Part shown: piece by piece, positions 1,415 through 64,000 of the stretch
How positions within the stretch are numbered: the first letter of the stretch is position 1
Layout: each line of letters opens with the position of its first letter
Source: Mytilus californianus
Taxonomy: Eukaryota
Direction: 5' to 3'
NCBI RefSeq assembly: GCF_021869535.1
Contig: NW_026262734.1
Coordinates: forward strand, 27,032,001-27,096,000
DNA: 64,000 bases
The notes under the pieces: model-generated
Databases searched by the model: none
What the model saw: only the letters and a program-made list of their open reading frames with translations
Told to the model about the DNA's origin: nothing
Program-made: the position numbers and the translations under genes

Positions 1415-4400
1415 TCAGAAACCAATGTCTGATCCTGGTTTTCGTTCATCTGGTTGAAACATGTCATTTTCATACCCAGCATTAGAGTATAACTGTGAAT
1501 AAGTATCGCCTACTAAAATTTAAAAATGTCAGATTGAATCACTGTTGACAATTTCATGAATATTTAAAACTATTTGGAACATAAACTGTAATTATTCCTA
1601 ACAACCGATACTACATATCATGTGAGTTTTAAGAACCAAGATACACTAAAAAAACATCTTAAAGATGATTCATTTTTTTTGCGATCAAAAATATCATAAA
1701 TTGGGTAGTAATTACTCGTACGGCGATCTATAGTTGCTAACATATATGTCATTTGGTCTCTGAGGAAAGTTGTCTTATTGGCAATCATACCGCATATCCT
1801 TATTTTATTTATTTTTTTAATTCAAGAATATCACCAATCAGGTACATTATTTTTTTTCACTCCAGAATATCATAAATTGAGTAATTATTTACGGTATAAT
1901 TTCCTATTAGCTTATCACCGTCAAGCTGCTGAACAATTATAAAGTCATTCTGTTCAGTATTTATTTCAGAAAAGTGTGACGAAAACATTTGTTCACATTC
2001 AAAATGTCGACAAATTCAAAGTATCGGCAATCAGGAAGTGGGTGTTGTACTGATCAAATATCCGCTCACACTTTATAGCTCATAATCGTCAAGCTGATGA
2101 TTAAATATGAAGTCATTTTGTTTAGTACTTCTAGATAAATGTGTGACGAAAAATTTCATTTAACATATTGAAATATTTCAAGGATCGGCTAACATGTGGG
2201 TCTTACAGATCCGAAAAATGCTCACACGTTAAAACTCATGTGTGTCAAGCAGATGACTAAGTATAATTTTCTGTTTTTGGACACTGAAGAAAACAATTTG
2301 CTCTATATGCTATAAAGGCCCTATTTCAGCCATTTTTTTAGTAAAAGCAACATAATTTTGAATAGTTTATGACAATCATCAACATCATGGGTACCACTAG
2401 TAAAGCAAAAACTGCTTACCCTCTGGAGGACCGAGTTACTCCCCGTTGTGTTTGTGTATTGCTTAGTCTTTTGGTTTTCTATGCAGTATTTTGTGGACTA
2501 TTTTTTATTTGTTAAGTCTTTTTTTTCTTTTATTGTCTGTCTTTCTTCGACTTATGATATTTTGAATTCCCTCATGGAATATCTCCCCTTTTTAATTTCT
2601 CCTGAAAATCAATTACATGTCCTGTGGAGCAGCCTACGTGAAATAGATATTTAGTTTGTTTATACCATAACAGAATGTTTATTTTTATAATTAAATTGAA
2701 TTCCTACCTCTATCATCCGTTTCCTCCTTCATACTTTCTTTTTCTTCCTCCCGTTGAAATTGAAACAGAAGCACTAACTTTCTAATTGGCAAGCATATTA
2801 AAAGTGCTGTTGCATTAAAGAAATTTGCCATGGCTACAGTTGCATCTCTGTATGGCGGGCCAGCATTTGTAGAGACAACCATCCAAACAAGAAAACAGCC
2901 GGCCGTGCAAATACACGACACAAAGATCCATCTGGATTCAAAATAGTTACTTTCACTGTCCCATGCAAGAGCAGCAAATACGGCAGTAAGAATGACGATA
3001 AATATTACTAATATCATAGACATGATCAAGGCAATATCGTATCTGTCTACTGGATCACACCACATCCAATCATTAATCATACTGTCCGACTGACGACTGG
3101 CAGACGGGTGTTCTAATATCAGCCATTCTATTGGAATAATGAGTTGTATGCAAACGATTCCAAGAGCACTCATAAAGAGGGAGCATGTACTAGTAAGACC
3201 GTTATATTTTCGAGGGCTGTACTCGGCGTTAATAAAACGCCAGTTGTCAATGGCTTTAACCAAAAGTGCAGCAAATACAATTGAATATACAACGCCCATC
3301 ATAAAACGTCTCACTCCACACGTGGCAGTAGATGCTGGTAAAAAGAATGCAAAGTTTATTGCATAGATTCCTAAAATTCCAATAAGCATCATGAATCCAA
3401 GTACTGTCGTGCCGCCCCTTACCGGATATGCAACCAAGAAATATGCAAAGACGAAAATGCCAATAAGTAACCCAACACAGGTAGGCACAGCTGTGGCAAT
3501 TGCCCAAATTGGCCATGTATAATGCAGAGTATATTCCACGGTACCATATTCAGTTTCAGTTTTATCATAATACAAATAGTTACGCGGTTCCATTTCCTTT
3601 GTCCGGTTCGAAGTCTGTGCTTGTGGCTGGATATTAAAAATTGAAGTATCGCAATTACAAAATCCGCCAACTGGACATTGAGAAGTAAAGCTGTCGGATT
3701 TAAAGCTGTCGTAAGAGGACATCGAAACTGCATTGTCACCTAAAACAGTACCAACCTACAAAAAAATAAAGAAAGGTCAAACTTACATTTCTTTTATTTA
3801 ATGGACTAAACTTCCAGGCAATTTAAAAAAAAATTAATAAGCCCAACGTGACATGTGGAAAGGAGAAAACTATCAATTTGTCAACATAAGACACAATTTG
3901 ATGTAACAGTTAAGCACACTTAAGGGAAAACTCAAGCACTAACCAAGTATTTTATCTTTCTTGATTTACCTTCATCAGGAACGCTCAAAATAATGAAAAT
4001 TGAGAATGCTTAAGTACTTAAAAACGCAGTAGATTGATAAATAAAAGGGAACAAACTATTGGAAAAATAAGAGATACCAAAGGGACATTTAAACAAACAA
4101 GTCGAAAGTTAAAATGACAACGCCAAGGCACAAAACGAACCCCACCAAAATCCTGGGATGATCTCAGGTGCTCAAAGTTTGAGGTTTTTCTGGTACTATG
4201 GGAACATTTCAGTCAACTAAAAAGTACTTGATAAAGTGATTTCCAAACAAAAACCAATTACCTAAAGGGTACTCAGAATATATGGCGCCATGGGAAATTA
4301 TAGACCTATTAGAATTATAAAGTTAATGATTTTACAATTTAAGAGATGTAGAAGATAGAAGTCTGACATATATATGGAACCTCAACTTTAACAGGTATAC

Positions 4401-7400
4401 TGTAAAACAAGTATACTTTTCACGAGCTACTTTCAGTAGCAGAAATTAATGCGAATGTAAATCATTCCGATAAGATCAAACTCGAATCTTTCGTGCAAAT
4501 AATATCTCAATAAAAGTATCAAAACGCAAAAAAAAAAATGCCGCGATGTCTGTTTGGATGGCCTAAACCATAAAGGAAAAAATGAATCAACGAAAATAAG
4601 TTAGTTTACAGTATTCAAATTTCTTTACAATTAAGATTGTAAACAATGAAAGCCTACTAAATATTCTTTCACTCACCTGTTTATACATAAAAGATCCAGA
4701 ATCCTTTACATAGTTGTTGATTGTATATCCAACATCCCAATAACGGTCTGAATTAAAGTTTAAATTGAAACCGTCAGCTATACCATATTCGGTTTCCAAC
4801 AATTTTTGGAAAAGTAAATCCCAGTTATTCTGTGTTTCAAAGCATTCACGAAATGTTGATAGTGCAGAGCAGCGTTCGTTTCTAGTTTTTTCGATTGCAG
4901 AAGCAGCCGCATATGTTGCTGCAATTGTTGTGTATACAAAATGATCGTCAATTTTCAACATAGCTTTTGTAATTGTTTCACTTTTTGAACAGAGCGGGTA
5001 CTGATTCATCACAACTTGAGCATCTGAAAGCTGACATTTGTGAATTGTCTGGTAGAATTCTTCAAACCAATCATCAGGAATGTTTTTACGGTTATAATAG
5101 GACAAATCAGTTAAGTAATTATCGAAACCGGTAACAGAAGTTTGACGAAGACCAATAGTGATTGATCCAATCACCTCGTTTTCAAAGCCTTCTACAACAT
5201 TCAGTGATGTTCCCCATATGTCTGTGCCAATCCAAATAAATCTATCTAGCACACCAAGGTCTTTTGCCGCTTGCAAAATTGGCCTAGGTTCTAAAGTAAT
5301 AAGAACTATTGCATTTGCTCCTTGTTGAGCGATAAGTTGTTCAACGACTGACTTAGCTTCATTTCCATCAGTTGGATAGGAAATTCCAACGGAGAAACCG
5401 ATACAAACGCCATTTTGATTGGCTTGTTTTTCAAGTTCATTAGCACCAGAAACACCATATGTTTCACGAGAATAAACTACGGAAACGTATGTCCAGTTTC
5501 TTTGGTAAAGTATTTCGGAAATAACTTTCATTTGTATGTTGTCCGGAGGTACAGTTCTTGCAAAGTATGGATATTCCGACTGATCGCTTAGAGAAACGGA
5601 CGAAGCCATAGAGCCAATAAGAGGAATCTTAAATGGTGCAAGTACTCTGTTTGCCGCCATGACGTTAGTTGATATAGTAGTGATAACACCCCCTATCGTT
5701 GAATTATTTATCACATAGTTCCCAAAATTGGATACGGTATTACATAAAGATCCGGACGAAAGTAAATTGTACAAATCTTGATCTATTCGAAGACTATTGG
5801 TGCACGTATCAAGAAGTATACCATGCAAGTCAAACGGCGAATTCGATAATCGCTGAATCGAGAAGAAAAATGACAGACCTCGGTAGAAATCTTCCATATT
5901 TAAACGTCCGCAGCGATAAGGATCTGTTCCTTGAGCATGAATGGGTAATACTGCGACAAGTGTTGCCGCGTTTGGATTGGTCGGATCGGTTGATTTGTCA
6001 AACATATACCGATTTGTGGTGTACCGAAGAGTTGGACATTCGGAACAAGCATCGGCGCGATTGCAGCTTCCGTCCCACAGAGGCGAATAGCTATCAACTA
6101 CCAATTTGTTGTCACTAGAATAGGTTCCAATCTGTATAAAAAATAAAATACAAGGATGCTAAGCTAGAGAAAAAGCAGCTATATATTTTGCTTACTACTA
6201 GAACTGCGATTTGTAAGGTTGATTTTTTTTAGTTTTCACCACAAAATTAAAAATCAAATTTTCATGCAAACATCATGCAAAAACAGTGTTATTGTAATAA
6301 ATTACGTTAAAGGATACTTTAAACCAAAATTATTTCTATTAATGTCTGAAATATCTTCATATATGTCATACAAATTGTCCTAAGTCGTCCTTTTTACTAT
6401 ATTTGACGAACCTACTTAAAACTTGTGATAAGGTCAGTTCAAGGGAAAGGCTTTTATAAAAACTCACTTTTTTAATTTGTTGGCATTAAGCTCAAGAATT
6501 ACACACAAGATATTCTACTCAAGGATTGAATGATATGTATATGAATCTTGTTTATGGAAATCAGTATATAAAAGAATACGTGTTTATTTATTAAAATGTA
6601 AACGACACACCTTTATTTTGAAATGAGCAATTTGGAATTTTTGAATAATTATACATTGTCTACCTGACATTACATTTTTTCCTAAATACTTTATACTTAT
6701 ATAGTAATGTAATCATGGTGAGTCCAATGTATAAATTAACATTAAATTAAGCAATAAAACTAGATTTTTTAGGGGAAATGGTATAAAAGATCACTTCAAA
6801 TGTAAAATGACAAACAAATGGTCAATTTCGATGAAATTTTTACTTGTTTATTCGTAATATTTCATTCGAGGCAACTACATCAGAAAAAGAACAAAGCTGA
6901 CTTGTGACAAGTCATCGGGTATCTTTCGATGAATAGAGGCCGTACTTTTAAAGTAAATTACATAAATGAAATCCTTAAAAAGTAAGAACTACGCAAGCAG
7001 AATTCCACTATAATAAGTAAAGAGAATCATCGGAAACTATCGTGTATATAGTAATTATTTTTTGGAATTCAAGATTGCAAGACCTCTATTTTAAGCTCTG
7101 ATTTTAAGCCATGCGTAGATATAACCTTCTACCTTAGTGGAAAGGAAAGGGTGATATCTTACCTTTTTGTAGTAATATGCCAATTTATCACCTTCCATCC
7201 TTGTTGATAATGAATACATTTGGTATCCTTTATTGCCATCCCGTTTGTCTGTGAATGTAAACTCGGATCCGGTCGGATCACTGAAATTAGCCTTTAAAAT
7301 GTTTTCCATTAGAATATCCCTACGGTTTGCTTCATTTCGGAACTTCTCGCAAACAGTTGAATAATCCTCTCCACAGACCCGTTTCAATGCAGAGTCAATG

Positions 7401-10400
7401 CCAATGGCAGCAGCATATACAGCATTGATTACGTGAAGAATGCCCGGATCCTGAATGTAATTTCGTTGTGAAATAACTACTTCTGACAAAGATGCGCACT
7501 GAACTGGATGTCGACCATCTGGAACCGTAAGATAACAATCTACCATTTCTTCATAAAACGCTGGAAACCAAGGGTTCTGAGGATAGTTTCCAGGAGATTT
7601 CGTGCTCAAATACGTATCAAAATCACCAATATCAGTCGATTCTAATGACCAAGTAACTGCGTCGATGGCAAGGTCTTCTACACCAGAAAGAATATCTAAA
7701 TTGTTTCCCCATGTCTCTGTACCTAGGAACTTAAATTTACCAATGGCAGAAGGATTTCGTCTGATTGCTTGAAATAATGTATTTATGTACCCAGTGTCTG
7801 CAAATATTACCACAGTATTAGCAGTTGGTTTCTTGAGTATAGCAGACACCACTTCATTTGAACTTTCACGTGTTGCTGTGCCATTATCCGGAAACTGGAT
7901 CATCTGACCAATACATATTTTATTTTCTCTAGCGAGATTAGAAAATGCCATCGACCCAAGTCGTCCGTAATTATTCGGAGAGTATACAACTTGAACGTAA
8001 CGTATATCAAAATTGTCCAAAAATCGTATCATAGATTCGGCTTGGTTGTCATCTGCAGGAACAGAACGCATGAAGTACGGATACTTATCCTTGTTCGATA
8101 AAGCCATGCTAGTCGAAGCGTAACTTATCTGTGGTATTTTCAGAGATTTTGCAATTCTGGCTAAATACAATGAACTGTCACTTGAATACCCTGCAATGTA
8201 TGCACTAATATCATCCGGATTTATTGTCTCTCCATTCTTCGTTAGTGAAATTATACCGTTGTGTATATCGGACACTGTATATCCCGTTTTTATAGCGCTC
8301 TCACATGAATCCAACCCAACTCCACCAAGTTTAATGTTCTTCAGAACATTAGCAAATGGTCCTTCTTTATCATTAACTTTACTAATGGCATAATGAAATG
8401 CTTCAAGAAGTTGAAACCCATGAAGGGTCTTGATATTTCCACATGAGAATGTATTTATATCGTTATTGTGTACGTCAAACACCCCTACAAATATAAAATG
8501 TACCATGTGACAAATTTTCATTAAATATAATGATACACATGAAAGAAACTATAGCAGTTAAATGATTGATACATTGTTTTCAAACATCCATTATATACAG
8601 AATATGCAGCATGAGAGAATAATAAATCAAAAATTTAAGTTCTGTCTACAGATGAAGAGGGAAAAAATTTGACTGTTCTTGAAAGAAAAGATGGTATGTA
8701 AGATATGCCGAATGTTGTCTTGCATTATGTCCCCTACGAGTCCCTCTTGTATTGTAAGGAGTTTTTAAGCATGCAGATATCATGACACTCTAACAAAACA
8801 AAACTCATCAAAAATACTAGGTAAATAATTTTGTACGCCAAACGCGCGTTTCGTCTTCGAAAGACTTATAAATAACGCTCGAATCAAAACTGCTAATGGG
8901 CCAAATCAAGTACGAAGTTGAAGAGGATTGAGGACCCAAAATTTAGAAATATTCCGCCAAATACAGCTATATATGGTGAAACGAGGTATAAACAAAAACG
9001 TCCCAATTTCGACCGGCTGTTGAAAGGCAAAATAAATTAACCTCTAAGCACGGGTCTTACTACCGCACAAGAAAAGAATACTTCCTGTATTATGGGTATA
9101 ACCCTTGTCGTATCCCTTTTTCTAGTACCTTATATGTTTACAAATGATATGCAATGATTCTTTCTTAAAAGTCCTTTCTAATATAATATAACGAAAAGAT
9201 TAGAGCTTAATTTTTTCAAGTCAATTCGTTCTGAGGGAGTTGTATCCTTAGTTTTAGTACAATCGTATAACATATAAACGAAAAGTTAACAATATGAAAG
9301 TATCAATTATATTATACATCATACCTCCAATCAAAATATCACCCGGTATATAAGAGAATTCCATCTGTGTGTTTACACATTCAGTACAGGGAGCATTACA
9401 ACGCGACTGAGTTCCGGGGAACAAGTTAACTAATGAGTTATCTGAAATCTGCAGAGATGCACCAGCGAACTCTCCTACCTGTAAAAACATATCTGATATT
9501 ACGAAACAAAGATATATACAGAAAGGGCACATATAAACGGTCATGCAGTTATCATTTCAAATGTGCATCTTTTTTTTCTGTCATTATTTTTAAATACAAA
9601 TAAACTCATCATAGATACCAGGATAAAAAAGACGACGCGCGTTTCGTCTACAAAAGACTCATCAGTGACGCTCGAATCTAAAAAAGTTAAAAAAAGGCCA
9701 AATAAAGTACAAAATTGAAGAGCATTGAGGACCAAAATTCCTAAAAGTTTTGCCAAGTGCACATATAATAAAGATAACACTGTATATGCGTCTAAAGCGT
9801 CTAACACGCTTTTCTGGATTTACCTTCGTCAGGAACCCCAAAACCCCCAAACAATGAAAGCCATTGATGTATAAGATCGAAAACTTGAGGAGCTATATAA
9901 CCAGTTTACTTCATTCGATAATACTGCAACATCCTTCCATAGGCAGATAATAGTTTACAATGGAATCGTTTTATGTGTTTTGCAAGAAAAGCACATACAC
10001 ATGGACTTCGGTAAAATTATAATGCGAAAAAAACAATAAAGTTAAAATAAATCCTTTCCATTACATTTTTTTTTCTTTCAAGCTCAATAGTTTATTCTTC
10101 AAAATTGACTTCAGAATTCTAAAGTAGTGCATAGAAATTTTGAAATCAATGCCAATGGTACAGTTGGTTTTATGAGGCAAATCAAGAGTGGTGCAACCGA
10201 TGCACTGCAATCAAGATAAAGGCTATAACGATCCCTTTAGGCACACATAAAATTATTCAATATACTTAGTTGTTTAGGATATTTACCGTTTTTAATGTGG
10301 ATCCATCATAATAAATCAGGTTCATTCCGGTATTACCCTCTCTATTCATAAAGCGGAAAGTGAAATCAGATGGATCTTTAAATGTCGTCGTTTCCATCTT

Positions 10401-13400
10401 TTCCATAATGACATTATTGACGTTGTCCATCGTCAGGAAATTATTGCAAACATCTGTGTAAGCCGGTCCACATTTCTCTTTCAATGTAGCATCAAGTGCG
10501 GCAGTGAAAGAGTAAACAGCATTGATGGTTGGAATCACATAGTTATCTTGTGTAATGGCTGCTGACCATGCTGCCACAGTTTGAATATTGCTACATTGTA
10601 CACCATGCCTGTAGTGCAACAGAAAAAATATTTCAAAATTGCAAAAAAAGGTTTGTGATTAATTTCATAAACAAATTAATTATCAAATCGCAAAAAAATA
10701 ACTGATTTTAAAAATGTTTATTGTGTATCTCAAATACAATATCGGTACAGACTTTGTCAATTGCAAGGCATATATGTTCGATGTATGCATGAGAACATAT
10801 AATTACAGGAACTCTGTCTATGAATAACAATTGAAAATAAAGACACCTAAAACATTATTTAACTTTCGCAGCATTTTCCCCATTAGTTTATTTTAATATT
10901 GCTTTTCATAATTGCATCAAAGAACTAACACGTGCCATTGTTATCAATCATTTTGCCATTAACATTTCCATAATCAACCTTGACGATGCGGTGTGTCGAA
11001 CACATTTTCTATGACATTGACAGCACGTAATAAGCTTTATTTTTCATACAATGACTATTTTTTTGGACTGGTAATCGTTTTGTATTACTTGAAACATCCC
11101 GAGAATACAATCCGACAAACTTAAATGTTTCGATTTTGGAAATAGTTATTGCACAGTTCTTGACTGATATGAACTACGGTTGCAACTTCCACATGAAAAA
11201 ATGATATTTCTTTTTAAAGTGCATTATGTATAATTAGTCTTCGGCTGCCTGAACTTTTGTTTTTAAGCGTTCCTGGTAATTGTAAATTTAACTATAAAGA
11301 AAAGGTAAAAGTCAAAACGTTATCCCGTAGACATAAAGGTTTTTTTTAGTAGTAGTTTATTGGTGTGTAAACTCGGTCGACTCCCTTTTAAATTGAAAAA
11401 AAGTCCGCAGGACTGTATGATAAGTATATCAGCATCAGTGAAAGGCCGCGTATTCAAAACCATGTTATCCGTAAAATTTACGTTATTTCATTTATAATTC
11501 GAATAAACACACTGAAAAAAATGTCCGGATCAAACATTTCATTTAAAACTTTCAGAACTCTTTCAAATGCGTAGAAAACCGTTTAACGTCATGAAACAAG
11601 TTTAAACACGTAAAAACATTTTGGTTATCATGACGCTCAGCATTGAACCATACTCACATGTAGAAATTGGGCAAATCACATCCAAGTATGTTCATGTAAT
11701 ATTCCATCAGGAAAGGGTTGGTCGTAATGCTGGAGGTCAGTGGGAGATTTCTTATAAAATCCATATACTTGTTGATAACTGAGGTTTTGATATTTAAAAA
11801 GAACGATTTCCCGCCATTTGTTCCAAGTCCTTGCGCAATAGACATAAAAGGCATGGGTGAAATGACAACTATGTTTGCAGCAGCTGAGTGTTTCGCTTTT
11901 TCTTGATAAAATTTAGTGGTATGAGGTCCATTTGTCCATATTACAACAACATGAGTAGTAGATGCAACAACAGATTGTATTACTTGTGTCATGTTGGTGG
12001 TTGAATCTATTTTATGAGAGGATAGGATGCAAACGCCTTCTTGGTTTGCAACAGCGGTAAAAGTTTCCAATCCACCTTTTCCATATTCCTCATCACTGTA
12101 AAGTACAGTCACATACCGGAAATTCAAAGCTTTTGCAAGTTTTGCCATAGCAACCGACAAGGTTACGTCACCTTGAATCGTTCTAAAAAATGTAGGATAG
12201 TCATCTTTATTTGTCAAACTATTGCTTGTAGCAAGAGGACTGATTAACGGAATGTTTAACGGCTTAACAACTTCATTTACTTCTATGGCCGATCTAGTGT
12301 TGTCTGTAACCCATGCGCGAACTTTAGATACTGTAATATTGTCATGTTCGTCGACAGGCAAAAGTCCCGAATATAACGAAGATAATACATCGAATCGTCT
12401 GCTTTCAACGTTACAGTGGTCCAAAATGAGAGCTCCAAGCTTGACATTTTTCAAATCAACTGGTGACATTTTTGAATTTACTTGATCGACGGCATACATC
12501 ATGGCGGCTGCAAACTGAAATCCATTAACAGTTCTCAAATCTCCACAGACATAAGGATTAGAAGTGCTCACATCGTGAATTCCAAATATACCACCTATTT
12601 CTACATCTCCTGGAATGTAAGCATATTCTCCTGGGTTATAGACATATGAACACTGAGCACAGCGTCCCTCACAGACGGATTTGAATGTGCCACTAGTAAG
12701 TCCAGGTGGTAGTTGTACTGGTAAATTGAACTGGTCTGACAGTCGTCCTTGTTCTGTACTAAACTTTCCTATCTGTTTGAAGAAAAATATAAACATCGTT
12801 ATAATGTAATATGTTACCACTTCGTCTTCTTCAGAGGTAAATGTTGTCATCTGAATTTACTTTTCAAGTATCCTTTAATGTTATACGTCAATAAGTTTTG
12901 CTTGTATATGCAAATCATAACATCCTAAAACATAAAGTCTTGTACTGGTATGCCACATAAAGTTTCAAAAGATGTGTATATCTAGTGTAATGTATGGATG
13001 TATTTGCTTTAGTAACATTTAGCTTATCCGTTATAATTCATGTTACTGCATTATATTTTATTTTTTGTTTGATTAAAATAGTAAAAGTTCTGTAGGTTTG
13101 ATGATTTCATTTACTTAGGTTGTAGCTTAATTAGTCTATATTAGTAGTGTTTATCATTAGTATTTTCTATTTAACTGAAAGGTTATTTTTTTAGTAAAAG
13201 TGAATTAGAGTAAAAAGTTTGTAGAAACAATTTGTCATTTGAAAATAATATGTTTAATGCCAGTGGCAAATAGTTCATGCATATTTAGAGAGACATTTGA
13301 TTTTTTAAATTAGAGCCGACTTTGTATTATTATATTGTAAATTACTGATTTATCTATAAGTGTTTAATGCTTTTGGTTGTGAATTGAATCTGCATGACCA

Positions 13401-19400: not shown

Positions 19401-22400
19401 ACCGAATATCGGCAAGAGAAGTGGCATTACGGCCTTGTCAATCAAGATCGAGCTGGGTTCGAAATCACGACCTCAGACTGTTGACAGGCTAGTAATAACT
19501 TTAAATGAACTACACAAATTAGATAAAAGACATTTAATTGAATATGAAATTATATGTATTTAATATAAAGGAGGGGAGATATACTACAGCTGCAAACTTT
19601 CCTTATAATGATAATGTGTTAAACTTACCAAGGTACAGTTGGTTAGACTGTGTAGTACATGAGTACTGACCAGTAGTCAGACGAGAGTAGAAATCTTGGG
19701 CATACTTCAAAGCTAATACTTCCGATGAACAAGTGTCATAGGCTTTCATCCCTGTGAACAAAAAGATTTTTTTTTAATCACACTATGAAGAAGTATATTT
19801 CTATATTAAAAGATTAACATTACCATTGTTATAACTTGCCTTTTAATATAAAATGTGTTATCCTGTAGAAATTATAGAAAAATACATGATTAATACCAAC
19901 TTAAGCATGTAGATAATACATAAAAAGATAACAATAGTTACACAAATATTGGAAGGTACAGTGTTTCTAAACAGTTGACGGTTATGTTAAGGTAGTATCA
20001 ATTATCGATTTCATTGTATTTATCGGACGTATCATGCAATAATGATTCCAAGAGTGCCTCCCCGTGCTTCAGGTTTATGCTCTTATAATATACTAGATTA
20101 TGGAGAGTGTGTCCGAGCGAGAACTTCTCTATGTTCATTACTTAAGGAATATTTATCAAAAAGTAGTATTTCACATTCAGCCCCATTCTTCTATTTAGTC
20201 AGACGTCAGTCGCTACCCTGATATACCCTATCTTTTGTGTTATTTGTCGGGTAATTTATGACGGATAGCGTTTGACGTCTTTAGCCGAACAGTTTTATCA
20301 TATTCACATAATTCAATTTATTGTGTGCTGGTTCATATTCTGGACGCCAGTCTTTGCTCCTTTCTAATAAAATCCACATAACAAAATACAAATATGAAGC
20401 TTAGAAATGGAAAAATATTAAATACTAAACTCGTTCAAAGGGTATCTACACGTCTCAATCTTCAAAATCGCTTATCTAAAAATACTACCATTGCTAACAT
20501 TTTTAACAATAAAAATCGTGGTTACCCTTCTATCGATAAGTGTCATGCCAAAAAATGACTTACATGTCCCCGTCTTTCCACCAACAATACGGTAAGGTCC
20601 ACGTTTAATGGTCGCACATTTTCTTTAAATTTTGAAACTGATATAACTTGAAAAACAAACAGTATTATTTATTTACTCACATGAAACAAACCGGGATGCG
20701 GTATTCAGTACGTAGGTGAAACTGGACGATATTTATCTAAACGCACGCAAGAACACCTGTATCGTTTTAAAAGACCCAATAAATTCAAAAGTATCATTTA
20801 TCAACATCTTAAAAAGCACAATTATCCTATTAAATATTTAACAGTTCAACCTTTAGAAGTAGTAAATAAGCAGCCTGGTGAATCTCATTCAAAGTTTGTA
20901 CGATCACGGAAAATAATTGAATTAAATTGGATTAAAAAATTACAGACAGTCTACCCTCTCGGTCTTAATAATATCATGGGAATTGGTAATATATCAACAA
21001 CCGATTCTGTTAACATTTTGGATATAGTTTCTAAAACTGTTCGTAAAAACCGTTCTCATGGGCGTAGAAAAAATCGCAATCAAAGAAAATTTCGGACCAA
21101 CCATACAAATATTTCGGACCTAATTTCTATTTCAAAAAACAACGGCAGACATTATCTATTAACCAAGCTCTGTTCTTTACCTATAAATAAATTAAATAAA
21201 ATTTTAGAGGATTGCAACACAATTTCATATTGCAGTCCTAAGTATGAAATCGTTTAAATTATAATGGCATATTGTTATTCTAAACTGTTTCCCAAAATTG
21301 ATCGCCCTGAAGATCATAAAAAACATTTTATTAAAATAAAGTATGTCAATAAAGGTTTTGATTTTGTAAATATTGCCGGTATTTTTAACGACCATTCTGT
21401 TAAAGAACAAATTCCTGGATATTTTGATATTACTGAACTCCCTCTTATTTGTTATATTTACAAGAAATCTACCCGTAAATTTGTGTTTAATTATAGCCAA
21501 GTCTGTAAAGATGTAAATATCAGTGAAAATACACCTCCGTCATGTAATTGTAGTAATTCCGAATACACTTATGGCCCCATTTCCCATGTTATAACAGGAG
21601 ACCTTAACATCGTTCGCGACCGAGAGTTAAAATCATTCCTCAGTAAAGGACCTAAATATCGTCCCCCGTCAATTATTAATTGGAATGAGTGTCGTAATTT
21701 CATCCACGACTCACTTCGTGCTTACTGTTTGAAATGGATAAAACGGGAAAAAGCTGACAAAAAATCTTTGCACTCTTTTTTTAATTCAGTAATGAAGATA
21801 GTTGATATACGTATACAACATTTTAAAGAACATTTTACTCTTAACAACAACCATAAAAATCCTATTTCTCGTATCAAACATAAACTAAAAGAACTAGCCA
21901 AGGAATTTGTTTTTGTCCCGGCGGATAAAGCTGCTAATAATATCATTATAGTTTGACGTAAATTTTACATTGAGGTTCTGCAAAAGGAAATCACGAATTC
22001 ACCAACATTCCAACTGAGTTCATTTTCAGAAAACGATATCTGTAACAAACATAAACTATTAGCTACTTCTTTACAAGCAGAACCAAATACAATGAAAGTA
22101 CCAACTATGTACTGGCTTCCGAGCTACACAAATCACCTTACAAATATAGATTTATTTCGTCTTCAAGTCATTGTTCCACTACTAAATTGTCTATTCTACT
22201 TACTAGTACACTTGGTACAATCAAAAACCTGATAATAAATTGTTCAAATAAGGCCTTTGAAAATAGTGGAATTAACTACTTTTGGAGTGTCAAAAACTCG
22301 TTGGAAGTACTTGATAAATTGCATGCATATATTGGTGATTTTGAATCTGTTCAAAGTTTTGATTTTTCTACCCTATATACCACTTTGCCTCATATTCTTA

Positions 22401-25400
22401 TTAAGAAAAAATTCACACACCTAATTAAATGGGCATTTAAAAAGTCGGAATGCGAATACATATGTTCAAACTCTTTTAGGTCATTTTTTAGTAGCAACAA
22501 ACATAAGAACTATGTCAATTGGACATGCTTTGATACTATATCTGCCCTTGAATTTTTACTTGATAACATTTTTGTTCGCTTTGGAGATTCCGTATATCGT
22601 CAAGTTATCGGAATTCCAATGGGGACTAACTGTGCACCACTTATTGCGGACCTGTTTTTGTATTGTTATGAGTTACAATTTATGACTAAAATCAGCAAAG
22701 ACCCATCGAAACAACATCTGATACAAAAATTTAACAATACTTTTAGATATTTGGATGATATATTGGCTCTCAATAATGACGACTTCAGTATGTATACTAA
22801 AGAAATTTATCCTGTTGAACTTACTTTAAATAAAGCTAATACTAACAATGACCACTGTCCTTTCCTCGATCTTGATATCTATATCATTAACGGGAAGCTT
22901 AATACAAACATTTATGATAAAAGAGATGATTTTTCATTTCCTATCGTTAATTATCCATTTTTAGATGGTGACGTTCCCTTGTCACAATCTTATGATGTTT
23001 ATATATCTCAACTTGTACGATTCGCTCGTGTATGTAACAACGTATTAGATTTTAGCGAGAGAAATTTATGTATTACTGAAAAATTATTACACCAGGGTTT
23101 TCGATATCATAAACTAGTCAAAACATTTACTAAATTTTATCATCGGTATAAGGATATCATTCGTAAATATAACTCAACATGCAGACATCTTAACGTTCGG
23201 GTATTTTACATCCAATCTTTTATGGTAATATTCTTTACAAAGCACAAAAATGTCAGTATTCACCTCAAAAGCTAACAAAACATTTAAACAGACTTATTAA
23301 GAAGGGATATAGTTACGATACTGTTGTCAGGTCATTAAAGATTGCATATTTTGGCTTTAATAATGATTCACTTATAGGGTCTTTGCATCGGAATTAAACA
23401 TATTTATTCTAAAACCAGTTGTTGGCATGACACGGGTTATGTTCTCCTCATATATTTTATGATGGTATAATACTAAACCCCTAACAGGAGGGATTGTGCC
23501 TGATATTCATATGATGAAAACATAATCTTTCAATCAGTTTAATTGAGGTCTGGAGCTGGCATGTCAGTAACTGCTAGTAGTCTGTTGTTATTTATGTATT
23601 ATTGTCATTTTGTTTATTTTCTTTTGTTTCCTATTCTGACATCGGACTCGGACTTCTCTTAAACTGAGTTTTACTGTGCGTACTGTTGTACGTTTGTTTT
23701 TTCTACATTGGCTAGAGGTATAGGGGAAGGGTTGAGATCTCAAAAAACATGTTTAACCCCGCCGCATTTTTGCGCCTGTCCCAAGTCAGGAGCCTCTGGC
23801 CTTTGTTAGTCTTGTATCATTTTTAATTTTAGTTTCTTGTGTATAATTTGGAGTTTAGTATGACGTCCATTATCACTGAACTAGTATACATATTTGTTTA
23901 GGGGCCAGCTGAAGGACGCCTCCGGTTGAGGGAGTTTCTCGCTGCATTGAAGACCCATTGGTGGCCTTCGGCTGTTGTCTGCTCTATGGGGTCGGGTTGT
24001 TGTCTCTTTGACACATTCCCCATTTCCATTCTCAATTTTATTATATATATATTTTCTTATACATTTTTTATTACATTTGATATAGTTTCAACATAATAAT
24101 TTCTGAAGCAACTTTTAAAAGTCACTATTCTAGGGCAACAGTTTTAGAGATTTTGGCGACAATGATATGTTGATTTTACTGACTAATCCATCATGTACAT
24201 CATGCCAGTGAGCAGTTGCTTGTATCTGATCTGATTTGTAATTAATAGTAATGACACGCTCACATTATTGAAGACAAATGTGCAGTTGTTCGGTAATGGA
24301 CTGTTTTCGTCGGACAACAGCTGATTTATTTTACACTAAGACCTAGTCTTTGGCTTCTGGTAACAGTTCGGGCAAACAAAATAAAGCCTGTGTGCCAATT
24401 CAATAACTGTACAACTCATGAAAACTCAGTTTTGAAATACTAGATTATTATTTCATTTTCCGTATCAAATTTCTTTTAAGAAGATCCTTGCATTGTATAA
24501 ATACCTTAAAATCATGGCAAACATCCTATGAATTATATTTTCGACTTACCTAACTTGACACCAGGTACGATAGCGTTGGTGTTAACTTTCTGTAATGCCC
24601 ATCTAGCTGCTTCGTAAACTTGAATCAGTTCTGTAAAAATCATTCAAATGTAAGTTCTATGAATCTTTTGTAAATTGGATCAGTTTATTTCTGCCTAAAA
24701 CTTTTTTCATGCAATCATCAATTGAGTAATAAACCCTTGCAAAAACTTTGAAGTGTCCGTAGGACACGGGTTGGCATATTGCAAAAAAGTAAAATAACAA
24801 ACCGAACTCCAAGGAAAATTCAAAACGGAAAGTCCATTATCAAATGGCAAAATCAAAAGCTCAAATACATCAAACGAACGGAAAACAACTGTCATTTACT
24901 TGACTTCTCAGGCATTTCCTTATGTAGAAAATGGAGGATTAAACCTGATTTTATAGCTATAGCTCAACTTCTCAAAGTTTGACAGTCGCATAGAATTCCA
25001 TTATATTTATAACAATGTGTGAGCAAAACAAACAGTCATAATAGGTAACAAAATATACAAAAAAAGTCATTACAACATATAGAAAAACTTTATATTCCAC
25101 AACAAACAAAAAACAATCCGAAAATTTTACAGAGAAAAGTTACAGTATGATTATTAAAATTAATTTTTTTCTCAGTAAAGACCTTTGTGGGGCTCTCCAC
25201 ATGCATATCCACCAAGAATTGACGTTCTCATCTCAAATAATCCACCAATCACAGCATTTGCCCCGGTCATTTGTACATCTACAGAAGAGCGTGTGTCGGA
25301 GCAAGTCTGTCTCACCAGTGTTTGGGCAGAACATATTGCTGCTACTAACACTGTCGACAATATATATACCCTGAAAGTCAAATATCAACATTAATATAAT

Positions 25401-28400: not shown

Positions 28401-29515
28401 TTCATCAAAAACTATCTTGACCAAAAACTTTAACCTGAAGCGGGACAGACGGACGGACGGACGAACGGACGCACAGACCGAAAAACATAATGCCCCTCTA
28501 CTATCGTAGGTGGGGCATAAAAAGAATAAGGTCATGCAATGCTGGTTACAGAAATGAACGATGTACAGAATTAAGAAATCATCTAATCACAGAAAAGGTT
28601 AATAATAAAAACATTTTCAAGCGTTATTTTTAAACATAAAGAAAAATTTCCTTCAAATCTAGAAAATACAGATTAAGGACCCCACTATCCAGACCCTCAT
28701 ATATGAGAAGCTTCAATGGTTGCATCGACGTGAGACTTCTATGGCATAACTTTCTCAGAACAACAATAGTGCTTCAACTTAAAGTGTCATAATTGTTTAA
28801 GGGTCCTCAAAATCTAGTAACTTTCTTTTTATGGCGAGTTTGCAATTTCAGTAACTGTAAAAATGGCTTTAGGTGAAATTAATCAACTGTTTTGGTTGTC
28901 AGCTGTGAAGATTAAAACACCGTACACTCTGCTGTGCCTAAATACTATCTAAATTTAAATATTCATTAATGATATAACTTTATATCATTGTTTTGTACTT
29001 TTATCTGCCAATTATATGTATTATTATTTTTTTTTTTTTAATTTTAAAAGGTGGATTATTTATTTTTTATATGGTTAAGCTTTGATTTATGCTTAATCGA
29101 AAACCGAATAAGGAGCTATATTGACGTCTCTAAAATCTCCCATTTTCCAATTAACAATCAGGTACCCAGAAAAGTTGCATACCAAGAATGCTTTAGCTTT
29201 TTATTTACAAGTAATTATTTGCACTTTGTAATCGTTCCCCCTAATTCCAAATATTTTTAATGTAAATTTATATCAGATTGGAGTAAGTGGTCACAACCTC
29301 TATAAAGTTTTGAATGTAACGATTTGCATTAATCAATCGGATCATTAAAAGATAATTAATATTTTAAAATTTCAAACAGAACTTGTTTTAAACAAACTGA
29401 AAATTAATCAACAACGAAAGACTACACCCGGTGTAAACATTGACATCGTGGAACAAGTAAAAGCGTATTTACGTATAATTCGAATGCTATGATCAGATCT
29501 TATAACTTACCTCAT
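1415..29515 (-). CDS. Giant class C (mGluR/CaSR-like) GPCR: signal peptide, five tandem Venus-flytrap (ANF-receptor) domains and a 7TM domain; ~2798 aa, 15 coding exons
   Basis: Exons read on the minus strand: 29515-29511 (ATGAG), 25370-25183, 24630-24550, 19751-19629, 19061-18895, 18301-17558, 17172-17041, 15713-14268, 12772-11658, 10608-10287, 9478-9325, 8484-7163, 6131-4677, 3755-2708, 1509-1415 (TGA). All junctions are GT-AG with matching phases; total 8397 nt. The N-terminus MRVYILSTVLVAAICSA is signal-like. Each module carries VFT motifs (PGD-x-x-IGG, LGG-x-x-LD-x-C, S-x-x-LSDK-x-x-YPYF-x-R, YG, GTD-x-W, I-x-AVY). The exon at 3755-2708 encodes seven hydrophobic segments with class C motifs (TCGVRRF, LLVK, NYFESRWI). 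Confidence 0.9.
2708..3755 (-). CDS. Exon 14 of the class C GPCR: last 3-Cys linker plus 7TM (7tm_3-like) domain
   Basis: ORF track 2691..3722. TM1 IWAIATAVPTCVGLLIGIFVFAYF, TM3 TCGVRRFMMGVVYSIVFAALLVK and TM6 NYFESRWIFVSCICT align by eye to the mGluR TM pattern. Acceptor at 3756, donor at 2707. Confidence 0.9.
9610..9850 (-). repeat. Dispersed repeat with a Penelope-type hammerhead-like core; more decayed copies at ~8830-8965 and ~25790-25925
   Basis: The minus strand reads gcgtca-CTGATGA-gtct tttgt agac-GAAA-cgcgcGTC; the flanking aagttgaagagcattgaggacc block is shared with the 8830 copy. Confidence 0.55.
20394..23397 (+). pseudogene. Disrupted ~1000-codon EN-RT ORF of the Naiad-type element, with four putative selenocysteine TGA codons
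   Basis: One frame runs 20394-~22122, with TGA at 20556, 20649, 20682 and 21954 and one TAA at 21255. There are 1-bp deletions near 22122 (restoring one base gives PKLHKSPYKYRFI) and near 23191 (restoring gives HLIRSGILHPIFYGN). Terminal TAA ends at 23397. Confidence 0.82.
23437..23525 (+). promoter_or_regulatory. SECIS element (form 2-like) in the 3' UTR of the retroelement
   Basis: ATGA-T core at 23459-23463. Helix II GGTATAAT (23464-71) pairs with ATTGTGCC (23493-500). Unpaired AAA at 23475-77, then an apical mini-stem (cccct/aggaggg). 3' core TGAT at 23501-04. Helix I: tcatat/atatga and ttatgtt/aacataa. Starts 40 nt after the ORF stop. Confidence 0.8.
25517..25640 (-). pseudogene. Degenerate duplicate of the 5' part of GPCR exon 2 (signal-peptide exon)
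   Basis: cag|ggtaatatattgtcgacactgttggtggcagcaatctattctgcccagaccctggtgagacag versus the real exon cag|ggtatatatattgtcgacagtgttagtagcagcaatatgttctgcccaaacactggtgagacag. A 1-bp deletion leads to an early TGA. Confidence 0.7.
27105..27325 (+). mobile_element. tRNA-derived SINE; related fragments on the minus strand at ~19310-19500 and ~41715-41910
   Basis: B-box-like gttcgaacccc, central ggttctctcgaggcactccgactccctcc domain, tail aaagtggcgttaaacaccaacaatcaatc. Confidence 0.6.
27919..28676. repeat. ~300-bp tandem repeat, 2.5 copies, each full unit carrying a (ggac)n / cccctctactatcgtaggtgggg module
   Basis: Units start at 27919, 28217 and 28523. The periods of 298 and 306 differ by two ggac units. 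Confidence 0.85.
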
Positions 29516-35974: not shown

Positions 35975-36024
35975 AAATTTATCATTTATGCAAATATCAT
36001 ATTTAATTTTAGAAGAAAAGCATC

Positions 36025-63602: not shown

Positions 63603-64000
63603 AATCAAATCAAAACGTAAAAGCTAGAGACCTTCCAGAGAGTGATAACTTACTTCCTTGGACAAGATTATTTTGAAGAAAAAGTACGAGATCTTCGAAC
63701 GTCAATAAACTGGTACGATTTGAGATTATTACGAGGAAGTACCTTTGGTTTGACAAGAAACCAGTAAATAACAGGTGCTTGTTCATTGAATTCCGGAACA
63801 TGGAATAACAAACATTCACTTTCTTGAACTTGAAGCTGTTGTCATGTCTTACAATGATTAGTGTGCCGAACAATAGTGATTCGGAGTCTTCTGACTCGAT
63901 GGAAGATATACAACTTAAACCTGTTCAACCTAAACCTCATCCCGCAAGACTCGTCAACACAGAAGTCCGAAGAAATGTATTTACACCTGTCACTCAGGGT

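What the first reader, a model, noticed from the sequence alone, without database searches (positions are those of the whole stretch)
1415..29515. Class C GPCR with five tandem Venus-flytrap domains on a single 7TM
Known class C GPCRs (mGluR, CaSR, T1R, GPRC6A, GABA-B) carry one VFT per chain. Here a phase-consistent ~2798-aa ORF has five complete, highly diverged VFT modules (480, 482, 479, 492 and 485 codons) in series before one 7TM. I know of no characterised receptor with this architecture. Hypothesis: a multi-ligand or avidity chemosensor that integrates several amino acids or ions in one polypeptide, or uses distal VFTs as ligand traps or adhesion/spacer units. The module count and splice chain are seen in the sequence; the function is inference.
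Basis: partly seen in the sequence, partly recalled or inferred. Interest (0 to 1): 0.88.

Follow-up and report, generated by a model that had tools for sequence, protein, structure and literature searches.

The report
Five-flytrap class C receptor gene
This mussel gene really does encode one giant receptor with five amino-acid-sensor ("Venus flytrap") domains in a row ahead of a single seven-helix membrane domain; the same unstudied design is conserved across molluscs, worms, brachiopods, echinoderms and horseshoe crabs.

Summary
Confirmed. On the minus strand, 15 GT-AG, phase-consistent exons (29515 to 1415) give one open frame of about 2799 aa: a signal peptide, five ANF_receptor/VFT modules of 480/482/479/492/485 codons, then one 7tm_3 domain. 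There is no NCD3G.

RNA contigs and stranded reads show the VFT4a-4b, VFT4-VFT5 and VFT5-7TM splices. Introns have no coverage. A sister species has a single 8893-nt spliced contig whose length fits the whole mRNA.

The window is Mytilus californianus LOC127711239. RefSeq isoform X2 matches my chain exactly through VFT1-4 but then uses a second, paralogous VFT5+7TM cassette that lies beyond the window. The locus therefore offers two alternative terminal cassettes.

Orthologues with five VFTs occur in all mollusc classes sampled, a nemertean, an annelid and a brachiopod. Four-VFT versions occur in hemichordates, echinoderms and chelicerates. Modules group by position, not by species, so the array is ancient.

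All parts are under purifying selection (dN/dS 0.05-0.16). Modules 2, 4 and 5 keep the full amino-acid-backbone-binding residue set.

Databases call these proteins "uncharacterized", and eight full-text searches found no description. The function remains inferred. I rate it a new architectural variant of class C GPCRs.

The parts
29511..29515 (-). Coding part of exon 1: ATG + AG, donor GTAAGT (Met, first two bases of Arg)
   Evidence: Sequence read. It matches the N-terminus 'MR' of RefSeq XP_052073189.1.
25183..25370 (-). Exon 2: signal peptide and start of VFT1
   Evidence: Acceptor, donor and phase. Hydrophobic segment at residues 3-21. Identical to P0162.
24550..24630 (-). Exon 3 (VFT1)
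19629..19751 (-). Exon 4 (VFT1). It carries the loop Cys that aligns with the inter-protomer disulfide Cys of mGluRs.
18895..19061 (-). Exon 5 (VFT1)
   Evidence: Pfam ANF_receptor hit on this ORF. Splice sites.
17558..18301 (-). Exon 6 (VFT1, lobe 2 and return to lobe 1)
   Evidence: Pfam ANF_receptor, E = 1.4e-16. Splice sites.
17041..17172 (-). Exon 7 (end of VFT1)
14268..15713 (-). Exon 8: three-Cys linker plus the whole of VFT2 (482 codons)
   Evidence: Pfam ANF_receptor, E = 4e-33. 100% identical to P0162 residues 481-962.
11658..12772 (-). Exon 9: linker plus most of VFT3
   Evidence: Pfam. Splice sites.
10287..10608 (-). Exon 10: end of VFT3
   Evidence: Identical to P0162.
9325..9478 (-). 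Exon 11: linker plus start of VFT4
   Evidence: Joint 8484|9325 seen in RNA contigs of X1, X2 and X5.
7163..8484 (-). Exon 12: VFT4 (the most conserved module)
   Evidence: Pfam ANF_receptor, E = 1.5e-45. mGluR7 ligand-binding domain, E = 1.7e-55. Joint 6131|7163 seen in contigs and in 3 raw reads.
4677..6131 (-). Exon 13: linker plus VFT5 (cassette a)
   Evidence: Pfam ANF_receptor, E = 5e-41. Joints on both sides seen in RNA.
2708..3755 (-). Exon 14: three-Cys stalk plus the seven-helix domain (cassette a)
   Evidence: Pfam 7tm_3, E = 2.2e-30, covering profile positions 6-249 of 251. Joint 3755|4677 in RNA. Conserved switch residues.
1415..1512 (-). Exon 15: C-terminal 32 aa and stop (cassette a)
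   Evidence: Phase-compatible acceptor. The encoded peptide is homologous to the C-tail of cassette b (tblastn E = 7e-6). It was not tested with reads.

Best explanation
Shown. This is one gene, Mytilus californianus LOC127711239. Its mRNA encodes a receptor of about 2799 aa: signal peptide, then five repeats of [VFT + three-Cys linker], then a class C seven-helix domain and a short tail. It belongs to an old, conserved and so far uncharacterised class C subfamily. Members have five VFTs in lophotrochozoans and four in ambulacrarians and chelicerates. In Mytilus, the last VFT, the 7TM and the tail exist as two tandem paralogous cassettes. Cassette a lies in the window and cassette b lies downstream. 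Each is spliced alternatively onto the shared VFT1-4.

Inferred mechanism. The receptor probably works as a disulfide-linked parallel dimer, like mGluR or CaSR. The loop cysteine that makes the inter-protomer bond in mGluRs is kept only in VFT1 and VFT5, so the dimer would be clamped at both ends. Every VFT keeps the lobe-2 cysteine that in mGluRs is bonded to the cysteine-rich domain, and every VFT is followed by a conserved three-Cys element. Each flytrap is therefore probably tethered to the next. VFT2, VFT4 and VFT5 keep the full residue set that holds the amino and carboxyl groups of an alpha-amino acid. VFT1 and VFT3 keep only part of it. None keeps the lysine that holds glutamate's side chain. 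I therefore read the protein as a multi-site sensor of amino acids or similar small molecules, not of glutamate specifically. Closure of several flytraps would be passed down the chain to VFT5 and on to a 7TM that retains the class C switch residues (K3.50, E6.35, W6.50).

Confidence. Architecture and single transcript: at least 0.95. Alternative cassettes: about 0.75. Mechanism: about 0.4.
For: Gene structure:
- Domains.
- Exon chain, phases and an uninterrupted frame.
- Topology.

RNA:
- Spliced joints 3755|4677, 6131|7163 and 8484|9325 appear in RNA contigs of two species.
- Three raw reads span 6131|7163. Coverage is exon-only and strand-specific.
- An 8893-nt contig in X5 runs 4450 nt past VFT4a. 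About 4318 nt are expected for VFT1-3.

Identity of the gene:
- 100% identical to RefSeq XP_052073189.1 through residue 1933, then a different VFT5+7TM at 48% and 63% identity.
- M. galloprovincialis DNA shows the order VFT1-4, cassette a, cassette b on one strand.
- An independent M. galloprovincialis gene model begins in the last 12 codons of VFT4 and continues into VFT5b.
- Cassettes a and b are sisters within the Mytilus lineage.

Family:
- Proteins of 2730-2890 aa with five matched stretches, and Logan contigs of about 9-10 kb encoding whole proteins.
- Four-VFT forms with 7tm_3 in Saccoglossus, a crinoid and Limulus.
- The module tree groups by position, with support of 96-100.

Functional signals:
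- dN/dS of 0.05-0.16 for every module.
- Binding-residue table. The role of mGluR1 Ser165 and the 8-residue motif are cited from PMC3703292.
- Cysteine pattern.
- 7TM motifs conserved in 35-39 of 39 family members.
- AF2 model with pLDDT 84.7, whose VFTs match mGluR structures at TM up to 0.90.
Against: - No ligand, G protein, tissue or phenotype is known for any member.
- Residue equivalences rest on sequence alignment, and the mGluR1 numbering is partly recalled from memory.
- Disulfide partners are inferred from conservation only.
- AF2 gave pTM 0.53 for VFT3+VFT4, so it does not support a fixed inter-module geometry. The chain may be flexible, which would weaken a rigid relay.
- The TM7 PKxY motif is altered (P-I-R-K-L).
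- Junctions upstream of exon 11 and the last junction were not tested with reads in this species.
- The VFT4-to-VFT5b splice rests on two annotation pipelines, not on reads I saw.
Confidence: 0.6

Rival explanations
1. Only the membrane-proximal VFT5 gates the 7TM, as the single VFT does in canonical class C receptors. VFT1-4 would then be a long stalk. It could work as a spacer, an adhesion or partner-binding arm, or a ligand trap that raises the local ligand concentration, rather than as allosterically coupled sensors.
For: AF2 gives well-folded modules but pTM of only 0.53, so no defined inter-module geometry. VFT1 and VFT3 have lost part of the amino-acid-binding set. Related proteins with two VFTs, a three-Cys element, a single TM helix and a long tail exist, which shows that this module also serves in non-GPCR surface proteins.
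Against: VFT4, which is not the proximal module, is the most conserved (61% identity to scallop, shortest branches) and keeps the full binding set. VFT2 keeps it too. The three-Cys linkers and the lobe-2 Cys are 96-100% conserved in all positions, as expected if movement must be transmitted. All modules have dN/dS of 0.16 or less.
Confidence: 0.27
2. The protein does not act as a ligand-activated G-protein-coupled receptor at all. It would be a scaffold or trans-cellular recognition molecule that merely uses a class C 7TM as its anchor, in the manner of GPR158/GPR179 or Drosophila BOSS.
For: The C-terminal tail is short and the PKxY motif is altered. The ectodomain is huge, about 2480 aa. No functional data exist.
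Against: K3.50, E6.35, W6.50, K7.51 and the TM3 Cys are conserved in 35-39 of 39 members from three superphyla. This fits a switching 7TM. The binding-site residues of three VFTs are retained.
Confidence: 0.1
3. The five VFT blocks are separate tandem genes or fragments that gene predictors, and the reader, have wrongly chained together. Fish V2R/OlfC arrays are wrongly fused in this way in some annotations.
For: Such fusions do exist. The Polypterus 'CASR, partial' models have 7-10 ANF domains with the 7tm_3 and NCD3G in the middle.
Against: Spliced RNA contigs and reads join VFT4a-4b-VFT5-7TM, and introns have zero depth. Internal modules have no start codon in context, no signal peptide and no 7TM of their own. 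All inter-module junctions are phase 0 and begin with the same [VI]G motif. Contigs of 8.8-10 kb in other species encode the entire protein. Modules are positionally orthologous across phyla.
Confidence: 0.02
4. The locus is a decaying pseudogene array.
For: The older M. galloprovincialis assembly has a one-base frame break inside VFT5a.
Against: The window has no stop or frameshift across 2799 codons. dN/dS is 0.05-0.16. The gene is expressed and spliced. The transcript contig of the sister species lies on VFT5a without gaps, so the frame break is probably an assembly error.
Confidence: 0.01

Closest known systems
Metabotropic glutamate receptors, and CaSR/GPRC6A/T1R-type class C GPCRs
   Same: The VFT fold matches: mGluR7 ligand-binding domain at E = 1.7e-55 and Foldseek TM up to 0.90 to mGluR1/2/5/8 VFTs. 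The 7tm_3 domain's best PDB matches are mGluR2/3. Shared features are the VFT disulfide cysteines, the lobe-2 Cys, the loop Cys (in VFT1 and VFT5), and K3.50, E6.35 and W6.50. The sequence at each VFT exit (VGxW/F...SxCxxxC) resembles the mGluR VFT-to-CRD transition (my reading of the sequence).
   Different: There are five VFTs per chain instead of one. There is no nine-cysteine NCD3G domain; a conserved three-Cys element follows each VFT instead. The glutamate side-chain lysine (K409 equivalent) is absent in all five modules. PKxY in TM7 is altered. Source names such as 'metabotropic glutamate receptor 3-like' or 'GRM7-like' are similarity labels, not orthology.
GABA-B receptors (class C without a cysteine-rich domain)
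   Same: A class C 7TM joined to a VFT without NCD3G (architecture summary in 10.1101/2025.04.15.649019).
   Different: GABA-B has one VFT per subunit and works as an obligate heterodimer. It did not appear among the PDB matches to this gene's VFT4 or 7TM.
BvgS-type bacterial sensor kinases with tandem periplasmic VFT domains
   Same: This is the described precedent for several flytraps in series on one receptor chain that forms a dimer (PMC4352136, found).
   Different: It is bacterial, has two VFTs of the periplasmic-binding-protein type, and outputs through a histidine kinase. No homology beyond the general fold class was tested here.
Fused gene models of tandem V2R/OlfC/CaSR-like arrays (e.g. 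Polypterus 'CASR protein, partial')
   Same: Many ANF_receptor hits in one predicted protein.
   Different: Those models have the 7tm_3 and NCD3G in the middle of the chain. They are concatenated complete receptors and so annotation artefacts. The family described here has one terminal 7TM, no NCD3G, and RNA support.
Two-VFT single-pass membrane proteins of lophotrochozoans (P0042, P0045, P0062, P0067 and others)
   Same: They are built from the same kind of VFT plus three-Cys element, and they are among the best matches to the profile of this gene's modules.
   Different: They have two VFTs, one TM helix and a long low-complexity cytoplasmic tail, with no 7tm_3. They too appear to be uncharacterised.

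Membership tests
Class C (glutamate-family) GPCR | Seven-helix domain of the 7tm_3 type | tested here: met
   Pfam PF00003, E = 2.2e-30, 106.6 bits against a cut-off of 33.5, profile positions 6-249 of 251. Seven hydrophobic segments. mGluR2 7TM at E = 3.8e-16.
Class C (glutamate-family) GPCR | Extracellular Venus-flytrap (ANF_receptor/LIVBP-like) ligand-binding domain | tested here: met
   Five PF01094 hits. The AF2 model matches mGluR VFT crystal structures at TM 0.82-0.90.
Class C (glutamate-family) GPCR | Conserved 7TM switch residues (TM3 Cys, K3.50, E6.35, W6.50, K7.51) | tested here: met
   Alignment to mGluR2. Conservation is 38/39, 35/39, 35/39, 39/39 and 38/39 across the family. Which residue is which in the generic numbering comes from my knowledge of mGluR structures.
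Class C (glutamate-family) GPCR | Constitutive dimer through the VFTs, covalent in mGluR and CaSR | tested here: inconclusive
   A Cys aligned with the mGluR inter-protomer loop Cys is 100% conserved in VFT1 and VFT5 and absent from VFT2-4 (the mGluR7 alignment is). No dimer was modelled or measured.
Class C (glutamate-family) GPCR | G-protein coupling on agonist binding | not testable with these tools
   Needs a cell assay.
mGluR/CaSR/T1R subgroup (VFT + NCD3G + 7TM) | Nine-cysteine NCD3G domain between VFT and 7TM | tested here: not met
   No PF07562 hit in the window's exons at E <= 0.01 or in the orthologues. Only three Cys lie between VFT5 and TM1.
Metabotropic glutamate receptor (as some sources name the orthologues) | Glutamate-specific contacts (the mGluR1 K409 equivalent binding the distal carboxylate) in addition to the backbone-binding set | tested here: not met
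   The K409-equivalent is F, F, Y, G and F in modules 1-5, and I in cassette b. The backbone set S/T/D/Y/D(E) is complete in modules 2, 4 and 5 only.
Multi-VFT class C receptors (the unnamed family defined here) | Four or five [VFT + three-Cys linker] units in series, one terminal 7tm_3, no NCD3G, and module-by-module orthology | tested here: met
   Each window module is nearest to the same-numbered module of scallop and other species, with clades supported at 96-100. The cassette tree follows bivalve phylogeny.

The most novel reading that the evidence does not exclude
An ancient bilaterian receptor class in which four or five disulfide-tethered flytraps form a serial allosteric chain. The chain would be clamped as a dimer at its first and last modules and would integrate several small-molecule ligands into one 7TM output. 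In mussels, one shared four-flytrap sensor array is alternatively spliced onto either of two different [VFT5 + 7TM + tail] signalling cassettes. That is a 'variable 3' cassette' gene organisation I do not know of for any GPCR.
Probability: 0.3. Interest if true: 0.88.

Novelty: new variant of a known kind. Interest (0 to 1): 0.72.

Why it matters
Class C GPCR activation is understood as one flytrap per subunit closing and re-orienting a dimer. The current survey of class C architectures I consulted lists only three types: ANF+NCD3G, ANF alone, and Cache+EGF.

A conserved receptor with four or five flytraps in series raises three questions:
- How is a conformational change carried over about 2400 extracellular residues?
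- Are several ligands integrated in one polypeptide?
- Why was the design kept for over half a billion years in protostomes and ambulacrarians, yet apparently not in chordates?

It also supplies natural material for multi-input biosensor design. It gives mussel, oyster and snail chemosensory biology a concrete candidate receptor. The paired terminal cassettes in Mytilus offer a natural experiment on swapping the signalling end of such a receptor.

Tried and rejected
- Separate tandem genes, pseudogene array, or assembly duplication: rejected. See the rival explanations.
- Sinanodonta protein P0002 (2798 aa) as the window's own product: rejected. It is only 43-53% identical.
- RefSeq isoform X2 as the exact product of the window: rejected for the last 865 residues, which come from cassette b.
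- The look-up of encoding contigs on P0162 found nothing on record, so I used the M. galloprovincialis model P0204 instead.
- Literature: eight full-text searches found no description of multi-VFT class C receptors. One search was badly framed and uninformative. Readings of the amphioxus and cephalopod GPCR surveys also found nothing. The library lacks most subscription journals, so this is absence of evidence only.
- Rfam on 1-30000: nothing.
- The two short, very deeply covered intronic spots are not related to each other.
- The AF2 two-module model did not resolve the inter-module geometry (pTM 0.53). Foldseek found no solved chain covering two modules.
- I could not submit the spliced cassette-a protein to the sequence tools, because it has no single reference.


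Full report
THE OBSERVATION

The gene lies on the minus strand. Pfam finds ANF_receptor (Venus-flytrap, VFT) domains on ORFs at 17498-19077, 14214-15683, 11654-12850, 7091-8521 and 4587-6104. It finds a complete 7tm_3 domain at 2691-3722 and no NCD3G.

I worked out splice sites and phases independently and got 15 GT-AG exons:
- Exon 1: 29515-29511 (ATGAG|GTAAGT).
- VFT1: 25370-25183, 24630-24550, 19751-19629, 19061-18895, 18301-17558 and 17172-17041.
- VFT2: 15713-14268.
- VFT3: 12772-11658 and 10608-10287.
- VFT4: 9478-9325 and 8484-7163.
- VFT5: 6131-4677.
- Stalk plus 7TM: 3755-2708.
- C-tail and stop: 1512-1415.

The joined frame has no stop.

Every inter-module junction is phase 0. Every following exon opens with [VI]-G-x-[FYV] and then a C-x(3-4)-C-x2-C element.

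Hydropathy shows a signal peptide, no membrane segment between modules, and seven helices at the C-terminal end. The five modules are only 24-28% identical to each other. They are therefore old duplicates, not an assembly artefact.

ONE TRANSCRIPT

RNA runs of the window's species (X1 and X2 as contigs; X21 as stranded raw reads) and of a close relative (X5) were laid on 3560-9559.
- The three predicted joints inside that stretch all appear as spliced contigs in X1, X2 and X5. They are 8484|9325, 6131|7163 and 3755|4677, each with CT..AC ends, which is GT..AG on the minus strand.
- Three independent raw reads show 6131|7163.
- Depth in the introns is zero, apart from two short repeats.
- X21 covers exons on one strand only, as expected for a minus-strand RNA.
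- In X5, one 8893-nt contig carries all three joints. It runs 4450 nt further upstream and 1315 nt further downstream. About 4318 nt are expected for VFT1-3, plus the 5' end. This fits a single mRNA for the whole protein.
- The remaining junctions in this species were not tested with reads, because the tool allowed one call. They are identical to the RefSeq model described next.

WHAT THE GENE IS

A profile of the five modules was searched against 1.84 billion representative proteins. At the top it returned proteins of 2730-2872 aa, each with five matched stretches. These come from scallop, a freshwater mussel, snails and a nemertean. Some come from Logan contigs of 9-10 kb that encode the entire protein.

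Pfam shows five ANF_receptor domains plus one terminal 7tm_3 and no NCD3G in these proteins.

A word-indexed search with the scallop protein listed 49 relatives. They cover bivalves, gastropods, a chiton, cephalopods, a nemertean and Capitella. Nearly all are named 'uncharacterized' or 'hypothetical'. A few are auto-named 'metabotropic glutamate receptor 3(-like)' or 'GRM7-like'.

One of them, XP_052073189.1, is Mytilus californianus LOC127711239 isoform X2 (2798 aa). It is 100% identical to my exon chain from residue 3 to residue 1933. The window is therefore this locus.

A SECOND TERMINAL CASSETTE

After VFT4, isoform X2 departs from the window.
- Its VFT5 is 48% identical to the window's, and its 7TM is 63% identical.
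- Genomic DNA of M. galloprovincialis (L001) shows the order VFT1-2-3-4, VFT5a-7TMa, VFT5b-7TMb on one strand. Cassette b starts about 4.8 kb after 7TMa. In the window, cassette b therefore lies beyond position 1.
- The reads prove that VFT4 is spliced to cassette a.
- The splice to cassette b is asserted by NCBI models in four Mytilus species.
- It is also asserted by an independent M. galloprovincialis model that starts in the last 12 codons of VFT4 and runs on into VFT5b. I did not see reads for it.
- Each cassette has its own homologous C-tail exon.
- In a tree of VFT5+7TM, a and b are sisters inside the mussel lineage (support 98). Cassette a has the shorter branch.
- The duplication is therefore lineage-specific, and the window holds the more conservative copy.

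AGE OF THE ARCHITECTURE

Four-VFT versions with a terminal 7tm_3 occur in Saccoglossus, a crinoid and Limulus. They also occur in another hemichordate, a second crinoid, a sea urchin and a sea cucumber. Lingula has about five modules. A mite and a nematode protein also match, but I did not check the nematode's 7TM. No chordate appeared in these searches, though their sensitivity is limited.

In a maximum-likelihood tree of 70 modules, modules group by position and not by species:
- All first modules form one clade across deuterostomes, chelicerates and lophotrochozoans (support 96).
- Lophotrochozoan module 5 groups with the last chelicerate module (support 97).
- Lophotrochozoan modules 2, 3 and 4 each form a clade (support 99) and together form one clade (support 100).

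The array therefore predates the mollusc-nemertean split, and its ends predate the protostome radiation. The ten-domain Polypterus 'CASR' models are a different thing. They are fused tandem receptors with the 7TM and NCD3G in the middle.

IS EVERY PART FUNCTIONAL?

Between M. californianus and M. galloprovincialis, dN/dS is 0.08, 0.10, 0.10, 0.16, 0.05 and 0.12 for VFT1-5a and 7TMa.

VFT4 aligns with the mGluR7 ligand-binding domain at E = 1.7e-55.

I used that alignment and a 131-module alignment to read the equivalents of mGluR1 Ser165/Thr188/Asp208/Tyr236/Asp318. These residues hold the alpha-carboxyl and alpha-amino groups. The role of Ser165 and the 8-residue motif of Acher and Bertrand are cited from PMC3703292. 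The other residue numbers come from my own knowledge. The window's modules read as follows:

| Module | S165 / T188 / D208 / Y236 / D318 equivalents |
|---|---|
| VFT1 | S / M / S / Y / D |
| VFT2 | S / T / D / Y / D |
| VFT3 | T / T / D / Y / M |
| VFT4 | S / T / D / Y / E |
| VFT5a | S / S / D / Y / D |

Three pockets are thus complete and two are degenerate. No module has the lysine that binds glutamate's distal carboxylate.

CYSTEINES

- The three linker Cys are 96-100% conserved ahead of modules 2-5. A three-Cys element also precedes TM1.
- The intradomain VFT cysteines and the lobe-2 Cys are invariant in all positions.
- A Cys in the lobe-1 loop aligns with the mGluR7 Cys of the inter-protomer disulfide loop. 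It is 100% conserved in modules 1 and 5 and absent from modules 2-4.
- In mGluRs the lobe-2 Cys is bonded to the cysteine-rich domain, and this bond is needed to couple VFT closure to the 7TM. This point is established knowledge and was not checked in a paper here.
- By analogy, each flytrap here would be tethered to the following linker, and the dimer would be clamped at both ends.

THE 7TM

Its best solved relatives are mGluR2 and mGluR3. Across 39 family members, conservation is as follows:
- TM3 Cys: 38 of 39
- K3.50: 35 of 39
- E6.35: 35 of 39
- W6.50: 39 of 39
- K7.51: 38 of 39

PKxY is changed to P-I-R-K-L.

STRUCTURE

AlphaFold2 on VFT3+VFT4, with 29 orthologues, gave pLDDT 84.7. Both flytraps were confidently folded. 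The linker was weaker (60-78) and pTM was 0.53. The relative orientation is therefore unresolved.

Foldseek matched one module at a time to mGluR1/2/5/8 VFT structures (TM up to 0.90, rmsd about 2.5-2.8 Å). It found no solved chain that covers two modules.

INTERPRETATION

Shown:
- One gene, one mRNA and one polypeptide with five VFTs and one 7TM.
- An ancient conserved family under purifying selection.
- A second terminal cassette in Mytilus.

Inferred:
- A disulfide-linked dimer.
- A multi-site sensor for amino-acid-like ligands, with module-to-module mechanical coupling down to a switching 7TM.

The main rival is that VFT1-4 are a stalk, adhesion arm or ligand trap, and that only VFT5 gates the 7TM. 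The low pTM and the degenerate pockets of VFT1 and VFT3 favour it. The top conservation and intact pocket of VFT4, and the conserved linkers, count against it.

NOVELTY

The sequences are public but carry no function. A recent survey of class C architectures lists only ANF+NCD3G, ANF alone, and Cache+EGF. Eight full-text searches and two targeted readings found no account of multi-VFT class C receptors. The nearest described precedent for flytraps in series is the bacterial kinase BvgS. I rate this a new architectural variant of a known receptor class. It is real and old, but not newly sequenced.

Noticed in passing
beyond window position 1 (downstream on the minus strand); L001:20424-23979: A second, paralogous VFT5+7TM(+tail) cassette follows the one in the window. 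RefSeq isoform X2 in four Mytilus species uses it. It is 48% (VFT5) and 63% (7TM) identical to the window's cassette and arose by duplication within the mussel lineage.
   Followed up: partly
window 25496-25633 (minus strand): A partial copy of the signal-peptide exon ('...ILSTLLVAAIYSAQTLVRQ...') lies about 250 bp upstream of the real exon 2 (25183-25370). It looks like a local tandem duplicate or pseudo-exon.
   Followed up: no
window 21264-23275 (+ strand), within the 4.8-kb intron between exons 3 and 4: Two long plus-strand ORFs, which by eye look like a retroelement (reverse-transcriptase-like) insertion, lie antisense to the receptor gene. Other first-stage notes (s1-320600, s1-320669) deal with it.
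   Followed up: no
window 3957-3990 and 8899-8943: Two short intronic stretches have very high depth in every RNA run (hundreds to over 1000, against 8-46 on the exons), with loose ends on both sides. They are pieces of abundant repeats or transcripts from elsewhere. They are unrelated to each other and have no Rfam match.
   Followed up: partly
P0042, P0045, P0062, P0067, P0070, P0082, P0104 and others; L002, L003: A related family of proteins of about 1100-1400 aa has two VFTs, a three-Cys element, a single TM helix and a long low-complexity cytoplasmic tail, with no 7tm_3. Several end in -ISRV. Examples were found in assemblies GCA_902652985.1 and GCA_001039355.2, which from memory are Pecten maximus and Lingula anatina.
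   Followed up: partly
L001:12346: The older M. galloprovincialis assembly has a one-base frame break inside VFT5a. The sister-species transcript contig lies on the window's VFT5a without gaps, so this is probably an assembly error.
   Followed up: partly
window exon structure, 29515-1415: VFT1 is split into seven exons, like ordinary class C genes. VFT2 and VFT5 are single exons, and VFT3 and VFT4 have two each. All module borders coincide with phase-0 introns, as expected if the array grew by exon-block duplication.
   Followed up: no
(orthologue lists): Gastropods (Haliotis, Patella, Littorina, Babylonia, Biomphalaria, Physella, Lymnaea, Nucella) and the nemertean Tubulanus each carry two paralogous five-VFT receptors, of about 2770 aa and about 2870-3045 aa. 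The bivalves sampled show one gene.
   Followed up: partly
window 36000-43500 (+ strand) and 60597-63608 (minus strand): The neighbouring ORFs look by eye like exons of an ABC-transporter-type membrane protein and of a phosphatase-like protein. No other class C receptor gene was seen in the rest of the window. I checked these with no tool beyond the ORF list.
   Followed up: no
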